From positions 2,800,327 to 2,864,326 of the forward strand of contig CM074807.1 in assembly GCA_037447605.1 (NCBI GenBank): a stretch of DNA of 64,000 nucleotides. Direction: 5' to 3'. The notes below the pieces were generated by a model. The model had not been told where the DNA came from. It worked only from the letters and a program-made list of their open reading frames with translations, and made no database searches. Positions 52,801-64,000 of this stretch are shown one piece after another (the stretch's first letter is position 1; each line of letters begins with the position of its first letter). Origin of the DNA: Zygnema circumcarinatum SAG 698-1b (Eukaryota > Plantae > Zygnematophyceae). The position numbers and the translations under genes were made by a program.

Positions 52801-55800
52801 GCGCAGCAGTTATCCACCACAATGGAAAGCTTGTGTACACCAATGCTTTTGATTAATCCGTTGACAAAAAGAGCTTTTTGGATGCTCCAGTTCTGAAGCA
52901 GAAACCTTCACTGCTAGTGAAGGCAGAAGAGCCCCCCACCTTTGAGATGGCCGCAGGAGGAGCAGAGATGCACCAACAGCTCGCGACTGGCTACCGCCAC
53001 CGCACTGTTCATCCAATGAGACGCTCCGGCAACTATGCCAGCTTTGCGAATACAGTTGTAGAAATCAAGCAGCCAAGAAATCCTTTGAGGTTCCACCAAC
53101 ACGTCTCGCAGCACGGGTCCAATCTGCAAGTGGACATTTGTGAATGGATGAGCTGAAGGTGGGGGAGTACTTTGGACGAAGGAGCATTAGGAGTTCGAGC
53201 AACTACAATCTATGAATTGCAAATTCATTCAAACACGAGATGTGCCCAAAAAATAGCAGAGGTTGCCAGGGCTTTGCTATCCAGTTCCTGTTAAGACTCT
53301 CCTTTCTAGTTTTTGTTCAAATGCGATGCAGTGCGAGCCTGATTGCATTCAAGTTCAATCCTACGACTTTGCTTCCCTTGTTCTCCGATAAATGCCGAAA
53401 GGTTCGCCTAGTTTTCTTACCAAAACTGCACTCACTGACGTCCCAGTTAGGAATCTTTCTGAATTCAAGCATTCTACTAAGCTCCACTCAAACTGATATA
53501 AGGGAACAATTGGATGCTTCCTGTGCCTCCATAGGCCTGCTTACACCCTAAAGCCACCCACCTTTGAAGCCCCAGACCTGCGACGCCCTCTTCCCTCGAA
53601 ACTGCTCTCATCCGACTCCCAGAGCAAAAGCTGCAACAAAAGTCGAAGAGTTGTGGTACAGAGCTCCATAGCTTGTGGCTGATCTCCACCCTGCGCTGTC
53701 TGCGTTGCTGCTCGAATGGCCACTTCTTGTGCGACCTTATAGATTGGCTGTCCAGACCATTCCATTCCCACCCCGTAAAAAAAACATCAGATATGATGGT
53801 GGCTAAAGCCATCTGAACGCTTTGCTGGCAGAGCACGTCAAGCAGGTAAAGCGGTTGTAGTGGGCCAACCAGCAGGTACTGCGTCTCCAAAGAAGCTCGG
53901 CAGCGCTCATGAAAATTGGCTGACATTCCCATGGGAGTGGCACTTGCTGGAGAAAACTCGAGCACCTGAACCACGAACAGCATAAAAAAGCATCGATGAC
54001 TTTCAGGGAGACGGAACCACCAGGAGCACTTCAATCTGAGCTGTACGGCGGCAGCGTTTCTAAGCGAGGGAGTGGATAAACTACCACAGCTTCGAGCAGA
54101 GCGAGGGCTCGGTTTTGGGCCGAAAACGATCGGCCTGGCTCCCCGTGAGCTATTTTTTCGACCTGCCCTAAAGCACACCACATTTGTCAGGATTCATGCA
54201 AGAAACACGCATGCCAAACGTGGAGCATATTCTTTTGGTGCATAAGCTTCAACACTGGAAAGAGGCGAGCAATTGAGGATTCCTTACATGAGTGAAGAAC
54301 GCGTCCTTTTCTGCTCCGCTGCTATCCATCCTGTAGATGCCCATATGCAGCTTGCTCGGATCAGCAATGTGAAACTCACAGCACAAATGATACGGTTCTT
54401 TGAAATACGAAAGATGTTGTGAATCTCCAACTTTGCATTAAAATAAACCAGCAGCATCCGACCAAACAGGGTGTATCAAGAGAAGAGCATCTGCACTCAA
54501 AGAGGCAACGGAACAAAACTATTTGCATCGTAAGGCATGGCAGTGATGAGAGAAGAACGTGCTTGCCAGCCTCTCTTGAAGAGAATCGCGGCGACTGCAA
54601 CCATTTCGCGACACACGACTGAGTCAACTCCTTCGCGTCCGACCACATAATTCAAACAGTACCTGGCAATCAGAAGCCAACAGCTCAATAGGAGTACCCA
54701 ACCTCGCCATCTCTAAGCCTGTGACCGGAGGAAGCTCTTTGAAAGGCTAATAATCATGCCAACAATGTAAAAACTAATCGCAAGCTGGCAAGCACAAGGT
54801 GCTTCAAGACGAGAGGAAGAGATACATGGATGAGAACAAGGGAATGCAGTCCTTGAAAAACTAAACAAAAGACGCAGCTAATCTCAAGTTTAACCTCCCT
54901 CCAATTTTCCTTAGGGGACAACTCTCTAGAATGTGTTGCAAAGAATACATATGTAATGTGACCGCTGCTTGTCATAACATGCAACAACATTTCGATGCCA
55001 TTCTTACTGTAGCAAGAGGCAAGCAAGACCAGTTGTGACTGTAAAATTAGGCCTTACGCTAGAAGACTACTACGGTCCGATGGAGGAAGATTTGGCCATT
55101 CTCGTAGTGCAGCCTGGCGCAGTGCTGAAGCCGCATGGAAACATGCTTCGCTAATTCTCGAAGTCTCTGAACTTTCACCAACAAGCAATTAAAGCATTAC
55201 TTTTCCATGAAAGCTTTCAGCCATCGAAACGACAGAATTGAAAATTCAAAAAAAACCCGCTAAAACTTCTCTGCTTTATACGCGAAAGGAAAACCTAATT
55301 TTAACACATTTAGAGCAAGTGGTGCTGTGGCTAGTAAGAAAGGGTAAACAAAAACGAATAAACTGAAGGGGACAATATACCGGCGACACAGTGAGTCACA
55401 GTCAACAGTCAGTAAGTCAACAGTCACTCTGTTGCAACTCAAATTCAAAGGCTTTAAAACAATAGTTTGCTCCTCGAACCGTCTTAGAGCTAACCATGTA
55501 CTAGAACAGTGCACCCCGCTACATCCATGTTAAACAGAATGTTGTACTCGTGACCCAGGCTCGATGTTCAGGCTGTATCACAATGCCTGCTACAAACCCC
55601 TCTCCTTTCAATCTTTTCTGAACGCTGGTATTAAATCATAACGTCACCTTTTACAAGGTTTTGTTATACCTGCCTAAAACAGGGTCTTGTCACTGTGTTC
55701 CTCGCACTCATGAACAACCTTGATACCTAGTGACTGATCAGCCTGATGTTTTTTCCACATTTCTCGAAAACTGTGAATACTCGATTCCTTTAGCCTCAAC

Positions 55801-57224
55801 ATTGGAGAATCACTAGCTCAAGCTGGTCATCGTTTAGTATTACAGTTTCAAGGCCGATCAATCCCTGTCAGATTCCTGCTCTGTCCTTGACCTCTTGTTT
55901 TAGCCAAACATTGATTGAAAGAGCTTTGACTTCCGCACTCGCTGCTGGCTTCACTTTTTAATGCATCAGCCCCTCCTCCATCAAGATTATTCGCTCTTCA
56001 GTAAAGCAGTGAAAGAACTTCTACAAGATGTATATTTTCCTGGAATTTTCTCTTGCCAGTGAGTATTCATTTCCCTACAGCATGGAGTGTCATTCATTTG
56101 TGATAGGCCCAATTTCATCAACTTTGGAAGATACCATGAGCCGGCTATCCCTTTCGTGCGGAGTCACCAGAACTCTGTTGCACTGCTGTTACAACACTAG
56201 AGTATGCTACAAACTCCATATCCTCCTGCGCGTTCCATGAGCAGATATTACTAGTTTCAAAAATGTACTCTTCAGTGCGAATGAGAGCTATGAGAACTTC
56301 TGTTCGTCAGTCGGCCACGATTGACCACTTTGAGCTATTGAATTCATCTAGGAACTGGTTAGAGCCATCTTCAATCTAATTGCGTTCTCGTTTGCTCTAG
56401 CAGTTTTCATTTCAGTTCCTAAAATTGCTATTGGTCCTACAATCCCATTTGAAAAGTGCTGAGGATCAGTGTCAAGCTCTCACTTCACTACCCTCAAATT
56501 CAGCCAACTAATGGACTAGCAACTGGCTTTCACGATTCTTGTTAATTGCGCTGTAACCTCTTCAACACAAACAAAACACTTGGGCGTGCTAGAATTTTTC
56601 CTTTCCACTCACACTCACACTCGTCTACTTGGCAGTTATCCTTCCTAAAAAGTTCAAGTCCATTCATTAGACACCCTTTGTTCATGTGATGCTGTTATTG
56701 GCTCAGAAATGTTTTTTCAACGAACAACAACTCATCTTCTCTAAAGAATGAGCGCTAATGCAATGATGCGCTGTAGAAGCGTCAGGAGTGCTAAAGTTCA
56801 TAAAATTCCTACTTGCATCCCTAGCATTGCTCACCCAATATGTGCTGGCATGCTTGCAGGGCCTTCGGAGATTGACGGAGGGCGACCAAAGCAGCTTCAG
56901 CATCTCGCCTCAAAGGTCCCTGCACGAGTTGAATCCATACATTCTTAAGATTTAGGCGGGTCCGTCGCTCTTGGGATGTATGATTTTAGAGGACATTCAT
57001 ATGAAAACATCTAGTCACAATGGCAAACAGAGATATATTTTCCACCTCCTCTTCTCGTGTAGAAGTGAAGATGCAATGGCTAATATTGAAAGGGTGCAGC
57101 AGCCATGATGATTTCAGATGCCAGGGGTGTTTCCTTTTTCTTGGAGTGTCGATAGCACCTGGAGAGACGCGCATGCTTGCTCCACCAACTGACGAGTGAT
57201 CTCCAGCTCTGAAAGGGTAGCCAT
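44932..57224 (-). CDS. XPO4: Exportin-4 (importin-beta family)
   Basis: About 28 exons matching plant XPO4: VEQACASLQ, ALRQSPKALQACQHILE, ALREW, ILFKRGW, VLEFSPASATPMG..FHERCR, SELLDGCRAL, LADSGEGETPL, SPRLME, EKYKDLRALLQLL, AADALLPLVLCEP, RGVVRTR*. ATG at 57224 is inferred. One intron is GC-AG. Confidence 0.93.
46797..46854. repeat. Poly(A/T) tract (42 A, TG, 14 A) in an XPO4 intron next to the 3' splice site
   Basis: Read directly. On the XPO4 sense strand it is a poly(U) tract ending about 13 nt before the acceptor. Confidence 0.97.
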
Positions 57225-59883
57225 TACTCTTCTTTTCCTGTTGTTACCCCCAAAATCTTGCCCCTTGCCTGCAGTACTAGCAGCAGTAATCGCTGACAAG
57301 TCTGGAGGATCAATGCCTTCTCTCTCTGCACACCGTAGCATATGAGAGAGTCGCCATGGCTATCAAACCATCAAAGCGGAAGCTTCCTCTGCCTGACAGC
57401 GGGCTGCTCTGCTCTGCTGATCGCAGCGAACCTCTCCTCTCTCGAACGGGGCGCCCGTGAGCGGCAGAATTTTGCTATAAATGGAGAGCCGCGGGAATTG
57501 AGGCGCTCAGTTTTCCATCACGGTAGTTTAAGTCTGACGCTGGCGGGCGCTGTGCTGCTGGGCGCACCGCCAGCGGATGATTGCTGGGGCTCGTCTGAAT
57601 AATGTGAGGCTGATGCAGCCATGCTTGAGCTGCATCTGATGGATGTCACATCAGCGAACTCAGAAGTGAAAGCAGTAAATGGGAAGCCTGAGCGGGGAAG
57701 CCTGGTGGCTGTATGGCTGCCGCTTTCAGCGGAAGGCTTCAAGACAAGCCTCCATGATTAAAGATGTTTTCCTTACCTTATGGACACTCTGCCCTCGTCG
57801 GAGTGTCTCAAAGGCTGAAATTTGACTGGATGAGAGGCTTGACAACTTTGGCAACAATTGTCATCTGGAGAAAGAGGAGACCAGAGGTTTCTTTGCGGGC
57901 CAGATGTCCGATGTTGTAGGGCACTAGATCGCCTTGTCGCAATTGTTTCTCTGTCTTGTCCCTAGAAGCAATGCAAAACAGTCCTTTTTTGGGGCTGCAT
58001 CGGCAGTGTTCGGCGTGAGCGATGCATAAGGGCGCATTCCTCGTTGTCGACGTTTGCAGCAAAGGGGATTTGATGATCCGATGGTTTGCCTCAAGTAAGT
58101 GTGGAACATATGGCCTGCCTGCCTGCCTAAAATAAATAAAGTCTTGTTCAGATTTGTCGTTGACGAGCAGCTAGCACGATTCTTTTACCATTTTGCAAAC
58201 TTTCGGGCTTAATCTGATAGGTAACAAAATTTGCAAGAAGGCCAGAGCAAGTTTCTAAAAATAATGTTCTTCTTAGTTCGCGTTTTTTGATTTTTCTTGC
58301 ATTCAGCTATGCTCCAACGAGAATGTCCCGCAATTGGCACTGTATCAGTTACGAAAATCAAATAGTTTATCACGCTCATGGTTCGGGACATTTTTCATGA
58401 TTCTTTCAGCGAACCCTGTTTTTGTGTCACCTGGAACTTTGGTGCACTTTAGTTGTTACAAACATATCTGGGCTGCGCCAGAATTTTGTGTCCTTTAATA
58501 TCGATGTGGTCATGTTCTTAGTATGTTTGATTTGTGCAAACCTTTGGAGGGAACTATGATGATTACTCCTGCTGAGAATTCTGGCATTGGGTATTGTACA
58601 GCTTGGTTGCTGCTGGCTGCCGCTGCATATATCTGATAGCCTCTCTTTGATGAGAAAAGGCGAAGCTGAGTTCCCTTTATGAATTAGAACGTGTAGTAGG
58701 TGCAAGAAGTCTCTCTCTTTCTCCTTTGGAGAAAAGGAAACAAATTGCTTTCTGTGGTTACAGTCGTAAGTGGGACTGGGTGGTGCATGTTGTTGATTAA
58801 CTGGTAAGAATAAGCTTTCGGTTTTAGTCAATCGTTCTATTCTTTCTAAAAAGTCATAACTTTTCTAGTTGCACTACTACGTAAGTGTGCTTTTAGAAAT
58901 TTAAAAATTTGAAAGGGATGTTACGTAGAAGCCAAACTTGTAATTATTTGTGTAATCTTTGCTCAAGTACTAAATCGTATTTTTGCGTTTTTGATAATTG
59001 CAGGAAAAGAAGGTGAATTGAAGTCAAAGGAACACTAATACATATCCCAGTTTGCACAATAATAAAAAAAAAAAAGTGGCATTTTGCAAATTTACTTATA
59101 TATTGAAAACATATTCGGATTTGTAAGAGAATTTGGGAGTAAAAGTGGGAGGATGAAAAGTGGTATGCTAGAAAGCAATGGAGGATGGATCAAAGTAAGA
59201 CTAAGAGACATGAGAAGGAAAATAAACAAGTTATTGGAAGAGAAATGTAAAGACAAAAAAGACATCGGACGAGAAATTAACAAGAAGATAGTGACATAGA
59301 CGACGAAGAGGAACAAAAAGAGCGGTCCTCTAATTGTGCATTAGGAATAATGTTGTCTTCACAAGCATAAATATAAGTCAAATATAGCTTTTCCTAAGTA
59401 GACTTAGCATAAGTTATTATAGAGAGATTATCCGAGACTGGCAGCCTCTCTCTCCATAGAGGATTGCTCCCACCTTGCCCACGTTGCCCTCCCAAGTTGC
59501 CGCCGCTGCCGCCGCCGTCAAGTCATCCCCGCCAGGCCCCGCGCCTCCCCCCTCGCCCCTGCCCCGTTACGCGGCGCGCCCCCCCTTACATGCCCCGTGG
59601 CCGTCGCGTCGCCTGTGTCGCCGACTGCCCGTCGGATGTTGCAGGTCCGGCCCCTCCGGGTGACGAGGCCCCCCGTCCGCTGCCCCGCCCCAGCCCCGCC
59701 CGCCCCGCCCCGCGGAGCACGAGAGAGCGGCGGGGACACTCGTTCAATTTTTCAGTTGAAAGGCGAGCGCGAGCTGAAGCTCAAGTCAGCGGCGTCACTC
59801 CTGCGGCTTCCTCCTCGAGCGCTTCCTCGGCCTCGCCCTCTCCCACTTCCTCTCCCCTCCCGCCTGCACTCCTTCCCGGCGCC

Positions 59884-62800
59884 ATGCTCGTGCCCCTGCG
59901 AGCGGGCTCGCCGCTGCTGCGCTCTGCCGCCTTCTCACACGCGCACGCGCCGCTCGCCACGCTGCCTCCTACTCGCCGGGGTGTCTCTGCGGCGCGGGCA
60001 GTCAGTTCCATGGCGCCAGATGCCAGGCACTCTCTGCACCTGCCACCTCTCTGCGCTCGTTTCGGCGTCCTTCTTTTGAGAGTTCCTTGAGAAATCATTT
60101 TTTTTTTCTTCTACTCTGTTTCTATCTATATGGTGCTGGCCACCTTTTGAATCTTCTCACTGGCAGACCAGGGACGTGCTTGTGCACTTCTTTTCTCCCC
60201 TTTTTTTTTTTTTCTTACTTAAAATGTTTACTACCCACCAGAGTCAGCCTGCAGCAACTTGCTCACACTTCTAATCACTGAAAGACCGTTTTTTAAAAAT
60301 GATCTTTCTTAAAAGAAATATTAATCATCCTGTTTTTGCTTCTATTTCTTTAGCTCAGTGGTGCGTCCATCTCTAAGGCATCTGATGGCTCACTTAAAGT
60401 TCCCGATCACCCAATCATCCCATTCATTGAAGGAGATGGCACCGGCCCCGATATATGGCGCGCAGCAAAACATGTCTTTGACTCCGCGGTTGAGAGGGCG
60501 TATGGTAGCAAGAGGTGAATTTTTCTGCCTTCTCTACTAATGCTCTTATCAATGCTTGCCAACTGGCAAGTCTGGCAGTTTTGCCAGCTCATGAAACATT
60601 TTCTCTCAAAGCATTTTTTTTCTAGGAATCCCAAACCATGGCATTTCAATCATGCATCACGCGTGAATTTTTTGGTGTACGAAAGCTCGGAAAAAGCAAG
60701 ATTGCTTCCAGTAGGACAGAGTTGAACATGTTCTCGGGCAAATCGAGCGCCGTATGAAGCAAGCTCGCTGCCTGCCATTCAATAAAGGGCGGCATCATGA
60801 GCTGCTTTAAGTATGCTTTTGTCATCGATATTTAAGCGACTGGTGGTGCCACTGAGGCTTCAACGACGATTTTTTTATTGTTTGTTTGTCCTCTGGATTC
60901 AATCTTTTTATTTGCTTGCTGACAAGCTGATGGGAGGGGGTATCCGCTTTGGTTCGATCTATGTTTTGTCAGGAAAATAGTTTGGAAGGAAGTTCTTGCA
61001 GGTGAAAAGGCCTTTGTGCAGACAGGCGAATGGCTGCCTCAGGCAACTTTGAGTGCTTTCCGAAAACATCTTGTTGGAATCAAGGTGAATCGAAGCTGCT
61101 GATCAGGGCCCAAAGTTTATGTTTCCTTGTTTTCCAATCAACGAACTAAGCACTTTTAATTTGGCTGACAAGGAAGGAATTTTCCTGTCCAGTCTTTTAT
61201 GCTCTCAAAGATGGCGAAAAGAATGTCGAGGAAACGTTCCCTGCCTTTATATTGAAGCTCTGCCAGAAGTATGGTTACGGCTTTTTATCCCAAATCGTTT
61301 AGTTGATTTGCCTATTTGCGATGTGATTGCTGTGGCAGGGTCCACTGACAACTCCAATAGGAGGCGGTATTCGATCCCTAAACGTGGCATTGAGGCAAGA
61401 GTTAGATCTTTATACGTGTCTTCGGCCTGTTCGGTGGTACTCGGTAATATGCTTACCCATTTATTGCATTCTTTACCCTTATTTCCTTTGTTACTTGCTC
61501 ATTACCATGACTATTCGGGTCATTTCATTGTAGTTTAGGTAAGAACTGCCTGCATCACGACTTGAATGTCCTTCATCATGTTTTAGACAGTTGTTTGCTT
61601 TATTGAGTCACTCGCTCTTCTTATGACGACTGGCTTTAAGCCATTTAAGCGTAATAAACTTAACGCTTCCTTGCATATTTGTTTCATTTGTACTGCACAT
61701 GTGAATGCCCCTTTGTCATATAATCATTTATAGCTTGGATCTTTTTAACTGAAATGGACTATTTTGAGTAGCTTCCTATGAGCCCAAGTTTTGCATGTAA
61801 CAAAACATGTCTGTTCGCGAAGGGGTTTGGGAAACCACTGCACCATGATGGGTAAAAGCTACTTATAAACACAGTGTGGAAACTGCTAATGACTAGGTCA
61901 TTCGGTCATGACAACATGGAAAATGCAGGGGGTACCATCTCCAGTAAAGCGGCCGGATGACGTGAATGTGGTCATTTTTCGAGAAAACACGGAGGATATA
62001 TATGCAGGCATCGAGTTTCAGCGTGGAACAAAGGATGCTGAGCTTTTTGCGGAACTGTTGCAAAAGCACTTCCCAGACCGATTCAAGAAGGTAGTCGGTT
62101 TCTCTTTTTTTTCTCTTGTCGTTCTTGCGGCATAGTAAATGCTTGCTGACAGCCTCAAGAGAAAATATCTCCTATAGTTCCTTTCTTAATTCTAAACTGT
62201 AAAGCTGTGGTTATCTTGCAGCAAGTTTAGCAGATGTTTCCGATTTCTCATTAGTAACGTTACTCTTCTAGCAAAGCGACTTCCAATTCTGACGATTTGT
62301 CGAAAGGTGCGATGACCTTTCTCCACTGACCAGCATCTTGCTGACTCCTTGCAGATCCGGTTTCCCGGCTCTTCCGGGTTTGGCGTGAAGCCTGTCTCGG
62401 AGGACGGCTCTAAACGGTTGGTCCGCGCCGCCATCAAGTTCGCACTGGCGAAGGCCCGAAAGAGCGTCACGCTTGTGCATAAGGTTTGCTTTCTCCCCCT
62501 GTCTCAGCCGCCGCATACAGAACAGAACAAACTCGCGAAGTTCAGGGTTGCGCCGGACTTTGTTTTTTTATCCTATGTCTTCGAACACACGTTGGGTTCG
62601 TACGGAATTGTTTTCCGTGGTGGATATAGTCGTCAGCTGCAAGGTGCTTAAAGTTTATGTGATGGTCCAAGTGCAAGAACGTTTCAGAGTTAAGACTGAT
62701 GAACTTCCTAAACGGCCTTGGCCCAAGGAAATTTACCATTTTATTCTAGGAACTGTACCCTTGAAGTACAAAAATCGGGAGGAAGCCGCAATTATGGTAT

Positions 62801-63983
62801 TATACTGAGATACGTCAGCAGATCACATGTAAACATACTGTGGTCACTGTTTGTTAACTAGTTCAATATGCATTTATCCAGTATTGATATCAGTTTTTCA
62901 AACCAAACTGGGCCCAGGCGTTGATGTTAGCTTTTCATTCAAACTGGGCCTTCAACTCCTACCTGTCGGAAATTGTGTCACAAGCTTCCTTGCTGCTCTG
63001 AAACGATGCAGTAACTCTGTGCGATGAAGGGATGCGGAGAGTGGTCACTGTGACGTGGCTGCATCCACCGGCAGCCACTGATCACTGATGTAAGTATTGT
63101 CAGTATGTAAATGAAAGTGAGCCAGCAAGGCTTGGAAAGCAATGTGGTGATTTACAGAAGGAGAGGATGCTTTCTGTTGCCGTACTTCTCAACAGCAGCC
63201 TTCTGACTTCGACCGCATTTAGAACGACGTGACTCGAACTCGCGCGCGTCATTGCGACTTTGAAAGCTGCCACATCAAATCTATGTCCATCTATCCCTGA
63301 AGGATGGTTGAGAATTCACTCTCCGTGTGGCCTAGGCTAACTTTCCTGCTTAGGGATCTTCAAGTCACTCAAATTTGAGCAGTGAACACGATTCTTGGAT
63401 ACAAACCAAACGCACCGATGCTACAAATACTGTTTTAATGCCTGCTGTGTTCAGGGCAACATCATGAAGTTTACAGAAGGTGCATTCCGCGACTGGGGCT
63501 ATGAGGTTGCTCGGGAAGAGTTTCGAGAGGATATCATTACAGAACGTGAAAGCTACATTCTGGACAACAAAGACTCTAATCCAGACATTTCAGTTGAGGT
63601 AAGCAGAGCGTCATCTTTTTTTCATGAAATTGAGGCAGCTAACCTTTCTACCTTTCAAATGGGCCTTTTTAGTCTGCAGACAAACTTTTGTTCGTGCAGG
63701 GCAAACAACAAGGCCTCTTGAAGTGAGAGGAACTTTGAGGAAGTGCCTTTGTACCATACTACCTTCTTTGCCTGACCTTATCTGATGGAAGTACAAACGA
63801 CATCTGCAGGATAATGCGCGTATCTTGGAGCCTGGATACAGTCTTATGCCGCCCAAGCGACAGGACGAGATCCGAAATGAGGTGGAGGGCGTTCTGGCGA
63901 AGCTGCATGCTTCACACGGCGATGGAAAGTGGAAGGAGAAGCTTTTGGTTCGCGATGCGATTGCTGACATTGCTCTACAGCAA
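59884..63983 (+). CDS. icd: Bacterial (icd)-type isocitrate dehydrogenase with organellar transit peptide; 3' part runs off the window
   Basis: Exons 59884-60000, 60354-60514, 60973-61084, 61339-61443, 61929-62090, 62355-62483, 63455-63598, 63810-63983 splice in frame. Motifs [98 protein letters not shown]. Confidence 0.95.
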
Positions 63984-64000
63984 GTAAGGGCCGCTATCCA

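What the first reader, a model, noticed from the sequence alone, without database searches (positions are those of the whole stretch)
59884..63983. Domesticated bacterial-type isocitrate dehydrogenase in a plant-lineage nuclear genome
Seen: eight exons splice into an IDH with the E. coli icd-type motifs ([11 protein letters not shown], [20 protein letters not shown], [24 protein letters not shown]). The substrate/catalytic residues equivalent to E. coli Ser113, Tyr160 and Lys230 are intact. A 39-aa Ala/Arg/Ser-rich, acid-free N-terminal extension precedes the enzyme. Established: land-plant NADP-IDHs belong to the distinct eukaryotic homodimeric subfamily and NAD-IDHs are heteromeric IDH3, so this type is not the standard plant complement. 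Inference: it is a horizontally or endosymbiotically acquired gene that gained introns and a plastid or mitochondrial targeting signal, possibly supplying 2-oxoglutarate and NAD(P)H inside an organelle. The coenzyme-specificity residues lie beyond the window end.
Basis: partly seen in the sequence, partly recalled or inferred. Interest (0 to 1): 0.85.

Follow-up and report, generated by a model that had tools for sequence, protein, structure and literature searches.

The report
Old bacterial-style isocitrate dehydrogenase in alga
This streptophyte alga has an expressed, intron-bearing nuclear gene for an E. coli-style NADP isocitrate dehydrogenase, but the gene belongs to an old family shared with many protists rather than being a recent bacterial capture by the plant lineage.

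Summary
The gene is real and expressed. Eight exons (59884-63983, +) give 375 uninterrupted residues of a type I, E. coli Icd-like isocitrate dehydrogenase. Spliced RNA contigs from four studies show all seven junctions. One correction: intron 1 is a GC-AG intron at 60027-60358, so exon 1 encodes 47 residues, not 39.

All eight substrate and catalytic residues that fall inside the window are conserved.

The closest relative is an 82%-identical algal transcript, followed by Spirogloea, Mesotaenium and Mesostigma. These relatives keep the full NADP-specificity residue set.

The "recent domestication" reading is only partly supported. The same long-form enzyme, with mitochondrial-type presequences, occurs in choanoflagellates, Cafeteria, Palpitomonas and others. 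In the ML tree all eukaryotic copies form one clade (97/84), sister to a Planctomycetes protein, although AU tests do not exclude alternatives. Three intron positions of identical phase are shared with Salpingoeca rosetta, and one of them also with a Symbiodinium-assembly contig.

No land-plant copy appeared among the best hits, and I found no paper describing this eukaryotic clade. Cyanobacterial origin could not be tested directly.

Three streptophyte orthologues end in SRL or ARL, a peroxisomal signal. The window gene's C-terminus lies beyond base 64000.

The parts
59707..59883 (+). 5' untranslated region; shortest observed transcript start
   Evidence: The contig of run X1 starts at 59707 and runs colinear into exon 1. 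There is no ATG between 59707 and 59884. Contigs of X2 and X3 run about 700 nt further upstream, which is unresolved.
59884..60026 (+). Exon 1: start codon plus 47 residues of an Ala/Ser/Arg/Pro-rich presequence with no acidic residue before D45
   Evidence: Translation. The RNA joint 60023->60356 has 3 ambiguous bases, and only the +3 cut gives a recognised splice pair, GC..AG.
60027..60358 (+).
   Evidence: The joint is seen in all 4 runs. The frame is kept across it.
60359..60514 (+). Exon 2: [11 protein letters not shown] region
   Evidence: NCBIfam NF005425 at E 2.4e-15. The junction to exon 3 is seen in 4 runs.
60973..61084 (+). Exon 3
   Evidence: NF005425 at E 9e-09. Junctions in 4 runs.
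61339..61443 (+). Exon 4: [20 protein letters not shown], holding the equivalents of S113, N115, R119 and R129. The intron before it (VGIK|GPLTTP, phase 0) is shared with S. rosetta
61929..62090 (+). Exon 5: [10 protein letters not shown], holding the R153 and Y160 equivalents. The intron after it (KK|IRFP, phase 0) is shared with S. rosetta
62355..62483 (+). Exon 6: ends in VHK, the K230 equivalent
63455..63598 (+). Exon 7: [11 protein letters not shown] and the start of the long-form insertion ([13 protein letters not shown]...)
   Evidence: Best NCBIfam match NF005610, 77 bits. Junctions in 4 runs.
63810..63983 (+). Exon 8: the rest of the roughly 45-residue long-form insertion and the D283 equivalent. 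It ends in ...ALQQ
   Evidence: NF005610 at E 2.9e-15. No solved structure contains this segment.
63984..64000 (+). Start of intron 8 (donor GTAAGG); the gene continues beyond the window. The intron position LQQ|VLTR, phase 0, is shared with S. rosetta and with a Symbiodinium sp. KB8 assembly contig
   Evidence: Loose ends of RNA contigs in 4 runs continue as ...GTACTCACAAGGCCGACCACC..., which reads VLTRPTTFDVV.

Best explanation
This is the 5' three-quarters of an expressed nuclear gene of a streptophyte alga. It encodes a homodimer-type, Mg/Mn-dependent, NADP-specific isocitrate dehydrogenase of the E. coli Icd kind (type I). It is the 'long form', which carries a conserved insertion of about 45 residues after the catalytic-lysine segment.

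The enzyme would oxidatively decarboxylate isocitrate to 2-oxoglutarate and make NADPH.

It is not a recent bacterial capture. It belongs to an old eukaryotic lineage of this enzyme that already had introns before streptophytes and choanoflagellates diverged, or that was passed between eukaryotes as an intron-bearing gene. That lineage is patchily retained: streptophyte algae, choanoflagellates, bicosoecids, cryptists and other protists have it, and it is apparently lost in land plants. Its nearest bacterial relatives are long-form enzymes of Planctomycetota, Myxococcota and Acidobacteriota.

The presequence of about 50 residues most likely sends the protein into an organelle. I rank mitochondrion first, by analogy with the non-green members, but plastid is not excluded. 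The three other non-Mesostigma streptophyte proteins with a complete C-terminus also end in a peroxisomal PTS1 (SRL or ARL), so a peroxisomal or dual location is plausible for this protein too.

Shown: the gene model, its expression, family membership, conserved active-site residues, the eukaryote-wide distribution and the shared introns.

Inferred: NADP specificity of this particular copy, dimer state, location, and loss in land plants.
For: - Gene model and open frame.
- Expression: all 7 junctions seen in spliced contigs of 4 runs from 4 studies, with exon depth far above intron depth.
- Exon-level family matches: exons match prokaryotic NADP-IDH models at E 1e-9 to 1e-22.
- Orthologue family matches: P0089 (82% identical over 356 aa) scores 651.7, 626.6 and 604.6 bits against cut-offs of 490, 567.3 and 585 for NF005425, TIGR00183 and NF005610. 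It scores 175 against 432 for mitochondrial NAD-IDH.
- Residues: the S113, N115, R119, R129, R153, Y160, K230 and D283 equivalents are conserved in the window protein. R292, D307, D311, H339, K344, Y345, V351, Y391 and R395 are conserved in every orthologue examined. The R292 equivalent is also visible in the RNA loose end VLTR.
- Closest solved structures are bacterial type I enzymes: B. subtilis 1HQS and E. coli 1AI2/3ICD.
- Relatives include Spirogloea SM000036S13316 and SM000002S05676, Mesotaenium ME000052S08165, Mesostigma Mv23022, Salpingoeca rosetta, Palpitomonas bilix and Cafeteria roenbergensis.
- Tree: in the careful ML tree, 34 eukaryotic or eukaryote-like sequences form one clade (UFBoot 97, SH-aLRT 84) that is sister to a Planctomycetes MAG protein (99/89). 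The green sequences lie on one side of a branch (94/88).
- Introns: three intron positions of identical phase are shared with S. rosetta, and a fourth is 1 nt apart. P is about 1e-4 under uniform placement and 6e-3 under a harsh null. The LQQ|VLTR intron is also present in a Symbiodinium KB8 assembly contig.
- Targeting signals: mitochondrial-type presequences in the non-green members, and PTS1-ending C-terminal extensions only in the three streptophyte sequences, out of 322 sequences with a complete C-terminus.
Against: - The protein tree is weak at depth. A tree joining the green sequences with the Planctomycetes protein to the exclusion of the other eukaryotes is not rejected (p-AU 0.35). 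Nor is one joining them to the Terriglobales/NF005610-like clade (p-AU 0.099).
- Seventeen of the 'eukaryotic' rows are unlabelled transcript-like sequences. I judged them eukaryotic only from presequences and contig length.
- The shared intron sites are proto-splice-like (AAG|G, CAG|GT), so some parallel gain is possible.
- No cyanobacterial or alphaproteobacterial sequence could be added to the tree.
- The C-terminal quarter lies outside the window, so the NADP-specificity residues and any PTS1 are unseen for this copy.
- Absence from land plants rests on their not appearing among the best 120 hits of two searches. It is not a dedicated genome survey.
Confidence: 0.75

Rival explanations
1. 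Lineage-specific horizontal transfer. A bacterium donated the gene to an ancestor of streptophytes or green plants, and the gene then gained introns and a targeting peptide independently of other eukaryotes.
For: The nearest non-eukaryotic relatives are 65-69% identical bacterial proteins, about as close as the non-green eukaryotic ones. The AU test does not reject green plus Planctomycetes P0219 as a clade (p 0.35). Land plants seem to lack the gene.
Against: The ML tree puts all eukaryotes in one clade at 97/84. Three exact intron positions, plus one near-exact, are shared with a choanoflagellate, and one with a Symbiodinium-assembly contig. Every eukaryotic member carries an N-terminal targeting extension.
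Confidence: 0.1
2. Endosymbiotic gene transfer from the cyanobacterial plastid ancestor. This was suggested by the insertion, which is also known from cyanobacterial IDH.
For: Exons 7-8 match only the 474-aa long-form model NF005610. From memory, cyanobacterial IDHs of about 473-475 aa carry an insertion at this place. The AU test for grouping with the NF005610-like clade is not significant (p 0.099).
Against: The insertion is common to a wide bacterial long-form group: Planctomycetota, Acidobacteriota, Chloroflexota and Myxococcota. Those bacterial proteins rank the NCBIfam models in the same order as the algal protein, with NF005425 best. Plastid-less heterotrophs (Salpingoeca, Cafeteria) carry the same gene. 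No cyanobacterial name occurs among the best 120 relatives. The genome scan is limited by its search patterns and is not evidence either way.
Confidence: 0.05
3. One early bacterial acquisition by some eukaryote, followed by spread of the intron-bearing gene between eukaryotes. For example, algal genes reaching choanoflagellates or the reverse, rather than vertical descent from the last eukaryotic common ancestor. This is a variant of the best explanation. It differs only in how the patchy distribution arose.
For: The distribution is very patchy and relationships inside the eukaryotic clade do not follow supergroups. For example, Cafeteria groups with choanoflagellates at 97/82. Branches within the clade are short.
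Against: The green sequences are one group whose internal order is compatible with species relationships: Mesostigma is outside Spirogloea plus the window gene. Differential loss explains the same pattern.
Confidence: 0.25
4. Contaminating bacterial DNA, or a dead pseudogene.
For: None beyond the bacterial-type sequence.
Against: There are seven spliceosomal introns and an uninterrupted frame. Spliced transcripts occur in 4 independent studies. Composition is like the surrounding window.
Confidence: 0.01

Closest known systems
E. coli Icd (NADP-dependent isocitrate dehydrogenase; PDB 3ICD, 1AI2) and B. subtilis IDH (PDB 1HQS)
   Same: Same subfamily. The orthologue passes TIGR00183 and NF005425. 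All substrate, metal, catalytic and NADP-specificity residues are conserved.
   Different: The algal protein has an insertion of about 45 residues replacing E. coli residues ~259-273, and no solved structure contains it. It also has an N-terminal targeting extension, is nuclear and has introns. Regulation by an AceK-type kinase acting on the Ser113 equivalent is not expected and was not tested.
Long-form bacterial NADP-IDH of Planctomycetota, Myxococcota and Acidobacteriota (e.g. MAG proteins P0219, P0218, P0129)
   Same: 65-69% identity, the same insertion, and the same ranking of NCBIfam models. P0219 is sister to the eukaryotic clade.
   Different: These have no presequence, no introns and no C-terminal extension.
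Database-annotated 'isocitrate dehydrogenase [NADP]' of Salpingoeca rosetta, Palpitomonas bilix and Cafeteria roenbergensis
   Same: Same eukaryotic clade, with 64-68% identity. S. rosetta shares 3 intron positions with the window gene.
   Different: They have short (20-35 aa) mitochondrial-type presequences and no PTS1-ending tail. I found no paper that describes them as a eukaryotic lineage of the Icd type. Wang et al. 2015 (PMC4360740) calls this subgroup eubacterial.
Land-plant NADP-ICDH isoforms (type II; cytosolic, mitochondrial/plastid, and peroxisomal)
   Same: Same reaction, and probably the same roles: 2-oxoglutarate and NADPH supply in organelles. The streptophyte orthologues end in SRL/ARL. 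From memory, the Arabidopsis peroxisomal isoform also ends in a PTS1.
   Different: A different subfamily, so this is a functional analogue rather than an orthologue. From general knowledge, type II and type I share under about 15-20% identity.
Cyanobacterial NADP-IDH with an extra internal segment (NF005610/PRK07362-type; recalled from the literature, not checked here)
   Same: Similar length class, with an insertion at the same place.
   Different: The algal and protist proteins score lower on NF005610 than bacterial long forms do: 593-611 bits against 624-693. The NF005610-best clade sits on a separate long branch. No cyanobacterial sequence was available for direct comparison.

Membership tests
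Prokaryote-type (type I) homodimeric NADP-IDH: TIGR00183 prok_nadp_idh / NF005425 | Whole-protein HMM score above the curated cut-off | tested here: inconclusive
   The window holds only about 3/4 of the protein. Its exons each match (summed about 324 bits on NF005425) but cannot reach the cut-off of 490. The 82%-identical orthologue P0089 does pass: 651.7 against 490 and 626.6 against 567.3.
Prokaryote-type (type I) homodimeric NADP-IDH | Isocitrate/metal-binding and catalytic residues (E. coli S113, N115, R119, R129, R153, Y160, K230', D283') | tested here: met
   All eight are conserved in the window protein.
Prokaryote-type (type I) homodimeric NADP-IDH | NADP-specificity set (R292', K344, Y345, V351, Y391, R395) and the remaining metal ligands D307 and D311 | not testable with these tools
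   These lie beyond base 64000. Only the R292 equivalent is visible, in the RNA loose end VLTR. All are conserved in P0089, Spirogloea, Mesostigma, Salpingoeca and Cafeteria.
Long-form NADP-IDH (NF005610 / PRK07362-like) | An insertion of about 45 residues after the [11 protein letters not shown] segment | tested here: met
   Exons 7-8 match NF005610 positions 240-345. P0089 scores 604.6 against a cut-off of 585, which is lower than its NF005425 score.
Mitochondrial hetero-oligomeric NAD-IDH (IDH3; TIGR00175) | HMM score above the cut-off | tested here: not met
   P0089 scores 175 bits against a cut-off of 432.4.
Eukaryotic type II NADP-IDH (plant cICDH, IDH1/2) | Closest sequence relatives are type II enzymes | tested here: not met
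   All 20 PDB matches at E<=1e-60 are bacterial or archaeal type I enzymes. All database relatives are of the Icd type.
Eukaryotic clade of Icd-type IDH (this report) | Groups with other eukaryotic copies and shares introns with them | tested here: met
   Clade support 97/84. Three shared intron positions with S. rosetta. The AU tests leave alternatives open.
PTS1-targeted peroxisomal proteins | C-terminal tripeptide of the SKL type | not testable with these tools
   The C-terminus is outside the window. The orthologues P0089 (ARL), Spirogloea P0185 (SRL) and Mesotaenium P0320 (SRL) have it, each on an extension of about 10-12 residues beyond the usual C-terminus (tails of 23-25 residues after KCSEF, against 13-14). 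None of the other 319 sequences with a complete C-terminus has such an extension.

The most novel reading that the evidence does not exclude
The E. coli-type dimeric NADP-IDH, which the literature treats as eubacterial, is also an ancient eukaryotic gene. It would have been intron-bearing and organelle-targeted before Archaeplastida and Opisthokonta diverged.

Streptophyte algae kept it up to the Zygnematophyceae. There it acquired a PTS1 tail and would serve as a peroxisomal, or dual organellar and peroxisomal, NADPH and 2-oxoglutarate source. Land plants then lost it and filled the role with a type II paralogue, a non-orthologous replacement at the water-to-land transition.
Probability: 0.3. 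Interest if true: 0.55.

Novelty: new member of a known kind. Interest (0 to 1): 0.35.

Why it matters
Textbook and review classifications treat the Icd-type dimeric NADP-IDH as bacterial. They give eukaryotes only IDH3 and type II enzymes.

This locus, with its relatives, shows a third eukaryotic IDH lineage that is old and shares introns across supergroups. It is present in the closest algal relatives of land plants and apparently absent from land plants themselves.

It therefore adds one gene to the list of metabolic losses or replacements at the origin of embryophytes. It also gives a concrete candidate for organellar or peroxisomal NADPH and 2-oxoglutarate supply in streptophyte algae.

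It is not a new enzyme chemistry, and it is not evidence of a recent bacterial gene capture.

Tried and rejected
1. It was rejected in favour of the GC-AG intron seen in RNA.

2. The "mosaic IDH" idea (note s1-397117). The per-exon switch from NF005425 to NF005610 arises because only the 474-aa model has columns for the insertion. Whole bacterial long forms (P0219, P0129, L012) and the algal orthologue rank the models identically.

3. Fetching this gene's own 3' end or full protein. It is not in the protein collection. A findings search by sequence was blank.

4. Getting cyanobacterial IDH sequences. The single genome-contig scan returned none among its 80 loci, and its patterns may simply miss them. 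A plasmid tblastn gave only enterobacterial and Bacillota icd.

5. Cluster look-ups for taxon names of unlabelled relatives. Most gave no names.

6. Identifying the source species of P0089 (SRR8128906-8) in papers: no hit. The gene IDs of the Spirogloea, Mesotaenium and Mesostigma orthologues are in no searchable paper.

7. Rfam scan of 55000-64000: nothing.

8. Repeats in 58500-64000: none.

9. Pfam on neighbouring ORFs: nothing.

10. ESM Atlas look-alikes: only bacterial IDH clusters, which is uninformative for plant distribution.

11. The first tree was spoiled by two wrong-frame ORFs (L002, L024) and two very long rows (P0030, P0056). In the rebuilt tree I corrected L002 and L024 and dropped P0030 and P0056. 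I also dropped nine short-form loci (L071, L045, L019, L037, L075, L081, L033, L064, L080) and three near-duplicates (P0186, P0212, P0192).

12. I did not fold the protein. The family has many solved structures, and a model would not settle location or origin.
Full report
**What is in the sequence**

Between 59884 and 63983 on the + strand, eight exons with canonical boundaries join into one open frame.

RNA evidence is good. I laid the Logan contigs of four runs of this organism, from four studies, on 59700-64000. They show spliced contigs across all seven junctions in every run. Exon depth is 60-560 and intron depth is mostly 0-25. These are therefore transcriptome assemblies, and the gene is expressed and spliced.

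The contigs correct one detail. The first junction joins 60026 to 60359. Of the four equivalent cut positions, only the last gives a recognised pair, GC..AG, so intron 1 is a GC-AG intron at 60027-60358.

Exon 1 therefore encodes 47 residues and the in-window product is 375 aa. The first 44 residues contain no acidic residue. The first 60 residues are rich in Ala, Ser, Leu, Pro and Arg (A13, S11, L7, P6, R5).

Behind exon 8 the contigs continue with letters that read VLTRPTTFDVV, so the gene goes on beyond the window.

**What enzyme it is**

Each exon matches the NCBIfam equivalog models for prokaryotic NADP-dependent isocitrate dehydrogenase. The window holds only about three quarters of the protein, so I looked for a full-length relative.

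- An exhaustive search with exon 8 led to P0020, and a search with P0020 brought in P0089.
- P0089 is a 550-aa protein from transcript contigs of SRR8128906-8. It is 82% identical to the window protein over 356 residues.
- P0089 passes the curated cut-offs of NF005425 (651.7 against 490), TIGR00183 (626.6 against 567.3) and NF005610 (604.6 against 585).
- It fails the mitochondrial NAD-IDH model (175 against 432).
- Its closest solved structures are B. subtilis and E. coli IDH.

In an alignment with E. coli Icd, the window protein keeps the equivalents of S113, N115, R119, R129, R153, Y160, K230 and D283. Every orthologue keeps R292, D307, D311, H339 and the NADP set K344, Y345, V351, Y391 and R395. 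NADP specificity of this copy is therefore a strong inference. It is not an observation.

**The insertion and the "mosaic" note**

Compared with E. coli, the protein has about 45 extra residues ([13 protein letters not shown]...HGDGKWKEK) encoded by exons 7 and 8. These exons match only the 474-aa model NF005610. That prompted another note on this window to call the protein mosaic.

This is a model artefact. The insertion is shared by a broad set of bacterial long-form IDHs from Planctomycetota, Myxococcota, Acidobacteriota and Chloroflexota. Those whole proteins also score best on NF005425, then TIGR00183, then NF005610, exactly like the algal orthologue.

No solved structure includes the insertion.

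**Who else has it**

A search with P0089 and one with its C-terminal half found these streptophyte relatives, with identity to the window protein where it was measured:

| Organism | Protein | Identity to window protein |
|---|---|---|
| Spirogloea muscicola | SM000036S13316 / SM000002S05676 | 72-76% |
| Mesotaenium endlicherianum | ME000052S08165 | 68% over a partial model |
| Mesostigma viride | Mv23022 | 71% |

At 64-70% identity the searches also found many non-green eukaryotes:
- Salpingoeca rosetta, plus four EukProt transcriptome proteins that cluster with it
- Palpitomonas bilix
- Cafeteria roenbergensis
- an MMETSP Tiarina transcript
- an 'icd' model in a Symbiodinium sp. KB8 assembly
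- numerous transcript-length metatranscriptome sequences

Named bacteria at similar identity are Planctomycetes, Phycisphaeraceae, Myxococcales and Vicinamibacteria.

No land-plant name occurs among the best 120 hits of either search. The collection includes NCBI nr and UniRef, and an embryophyte orthologue would be expected to rank near the Zygnematophyceae. Absence from land plants is therefore likely, but it has not been surveyed genome by genome.

**Phylogeny**

I built a careful IQ-TREE analysis (LG+C20 PMSF; 80 rows by 480 columns). Rows left out are listed under tried and rejected.

- All 34 eukaryotic or eukaryote-like sequences fall in one clade (UFBoot 97, SH-aLRT 84).
- That clade is sister to a Planctomycetes MAG protein (99/89).
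- The next group out contains Planctomycetota/Phycisphaerae sequences, together with several nested short-form sequences from Myxococcota, Acidobacteriota and Pseudomonadota.
- The five green sequences (window, P0089, Spirogloea, a GC-rich metagenomic eukaryote-like model, Mesostigma) form one side of a branch (94/88).
- Window plus P0089 is supported at 100/98. Adding Spirogloea gives 100/97.

Deep resolution is limited. AU tests do not reject green plus the Planctomycetes protein as a clade (p 0.35). They also do not reject green plus the Terriglobales/NF005610-best clade (p 0.099).

**Introns**

Independent evidence comes from gene structure. I mapped the S. rosetta gene (10 exons) onto the protein alignment.

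| Position | Window gene | S. rosetta |
|---|---|---|
| VGIK\|GPLTTP | phase 0 | phase 0 |
| KK\|IRFP | phase 0 | phase 0 |
| LQQ\|VLTR | phase 0 | phase 0 |
| WYS\|GVPS | phase 0 | 1 nt away |

With 7 and 8 introns in the shared 325 columns, three exact coincidences have P of about 1e-4 under random placement. P is 6e-3 if only a quarter of the columns can accept introns.

A contig of the Symbiodinium sp. KB8 assembly has a GT-AG intron at the same LQQ|VLTR, phase 0 position.

The Mesotaenium gene model lacks exactly 'VGIK' and 'GVPSPVK...VVIFRE'. This is what mis-called exon edges at two of these positions would produce.

The Cafeteria copy and two unlabelled eukaryotic copies are intronless.

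Together with the tree, this argues that the gene was already a eukaryotic, intron-bearing gene before these lineages separated, or that it moved between eukaryotes as such. It argues against an independent bacterial capture by the plant lineage.

**Cyanobacterial origin**

I could not test this directly because no cyanobacterial sequence was obtainable. Presence of the gene in plastid-less heterotrophs, and the shared introns, make it unlikely.

**Location**

All non-green eukaryotic members with a complete N-terminus carry 20-35-residue presequences. Most end in an R-(F/W/Y)-(A/G)-S | (A/T)-I motif, which is typical of mitochondrial processing.

The streptophyte members have longer extensions: about 50 residues here and about 90 in P0089 and Spirogloea. 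These are richer in Ser, Thr and Pro, so plastid targeting cannot be excluded without a predictor or an experiment.

Unexpectedly, P0089, Spirogloea P0185 and Mesotaenium P0320 each extend about 10-12 residues beyond the usual C-terminus and end in ARL, SRL and SRL. By my knowledge of plant peroxisomal signals, these are canonical PTS1 tripeptides. None of the other 319 sequences with a complete C-terminus has such an extension.

The window gene is nested within this group, so it probably has the tail too, but its C-terminus is outside the window.

An in-frame Met43 just before the mature domain could give a presequence-less form. That is speculation.

**5' end**

One run's contig starts at 59707, and there is no ATG between 59707 and 59884, so 59884 is the likely start codon. 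In two other runs the contig that holds exon 1 extends about 700 nt upstream of 59700 at about a third of the exon depth.

There is an in-frame ATG at 59590 in a Pro-rich, GC-rich stretch. I could not resolve whether this reflects a longer 5' UTR, an alternative start or a neighbouring transcript.

**Literature**

Full-text searches found no paper that describes an Icd-type dimeric NADP-IDH lineage in eukaryotes or in streptophyte algae.

Wang et al. 2015 (PMC4360740) describe this subgroup as eubacterial. A 2021 study (PMC8333347) repeats the division into prokaryotic homodimeric NADP-IDH, eukaryotic IDH3 and type II. The chromalveolate HGT paper (PMC2064935) concerns the unrelated monomeric IDH.

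The proteins are, however, present and auto-annotated in public databases.

**Verdict**

The enzyme assignment is right.

The evolutionary interpretation needs replacing. This is a retained member of an old, patchily distributed eukaryotic lineage of a bacterial-type enzyme, probably lost in land plants. It is not a recent domestication.

It is a new member of a known kind, of moderate interest. The PTS1 tail in sister species and the cross-supergroup introns are the most interesting leads.

Noticed in passing
window 60027-60358: Intron 1 is a GC-AG intron (CAG|GCACTC ... CTCAG|T). All other introns of the gene are GT-AG.
   Followed up: yes
window ~58975-59700 and the ATG at 59590: In runs X2 and X3, the contig that carries exon 1 extends about 700 nt upstream of 59700, while X1 starts at 59707. 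An in-frame ATG at 59590 would add 98 Pro-rich residues. It is unclear whether this is a long 5' UTR, an alternative start or an overlapping neighbour transcript.
   Followed up: partly
window 62455-63482 (intron 6): Three of the four runs hold a 1028-nt unspliced contig spanning the whole 971-nt intron 6, and the fourth (X3) holds an 882-nt contig (62601-63482) that does not reach its 5' edge. Depth is 4-20% of exon depth, higher than for the other introns. This is intron retention or pre-mRNA. Rfam finds nothing there.
   Followed up: partly
window 60200: One run (X4) has one extra T in the poly-T tract of intron 1. This is a length polymorphism or a homopolymer error.
   Followed up: no
P0089, P0185 (Spirogloea), P0320 (Mesotaenium) C-termini: The streptophyte orthologues carry a C-terminal extension of about 10-12 residues ending in ARL, SRL and SRL (PTS1-like), in addition to long N-terminal extensions. 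Mesostigma and all non-green members lack it.
   Followed up: partly
L085 (Salpingoeca rosetta GL832956.1) and L087 (Symbiodinium sp. KB8 CAJNDU010036350.1): The LQQ|VLTR phase-0 intron is shared by a streptophyte alga, a choanoflagellate and a dinoflagellate-assembly contig. The Symbiodinium contig might come from another eukaryote present in the culture.
   Followed up: partly
P0320 = Mesotaenium ME000052S08165; P0067 (EukProt Trinity); P0020 (JGI metagenome 3300050338): Three public models look faulty. The Mesotaenium model lacks the N-terminus and two internal segments next to conserved intron sites. P0067 has its first ~97 residues duplicated. P0020 reads through an intron after VVIFR and loses the frame after KVNPGS.
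   Followed up: partly
P0219 (Planctomycetes MAG, 724-kb contig): A single bacterial protein is sister to the whole eukaryotic clade (99/89). It could be the nearest surviving donor lineage or a eukaryote-to-bacterium transfer.
   Followed up: no
tree, rows L015, L020, L023, L024, L036, L049, L055: Short-form IDHs of about 430 aa from Myxococcota, Acidobacteriota and Gammaproteobacteria nest inside the long-form group. The insertion has therefore probably been lost secondarily in some bacteria.
   Followed up: no
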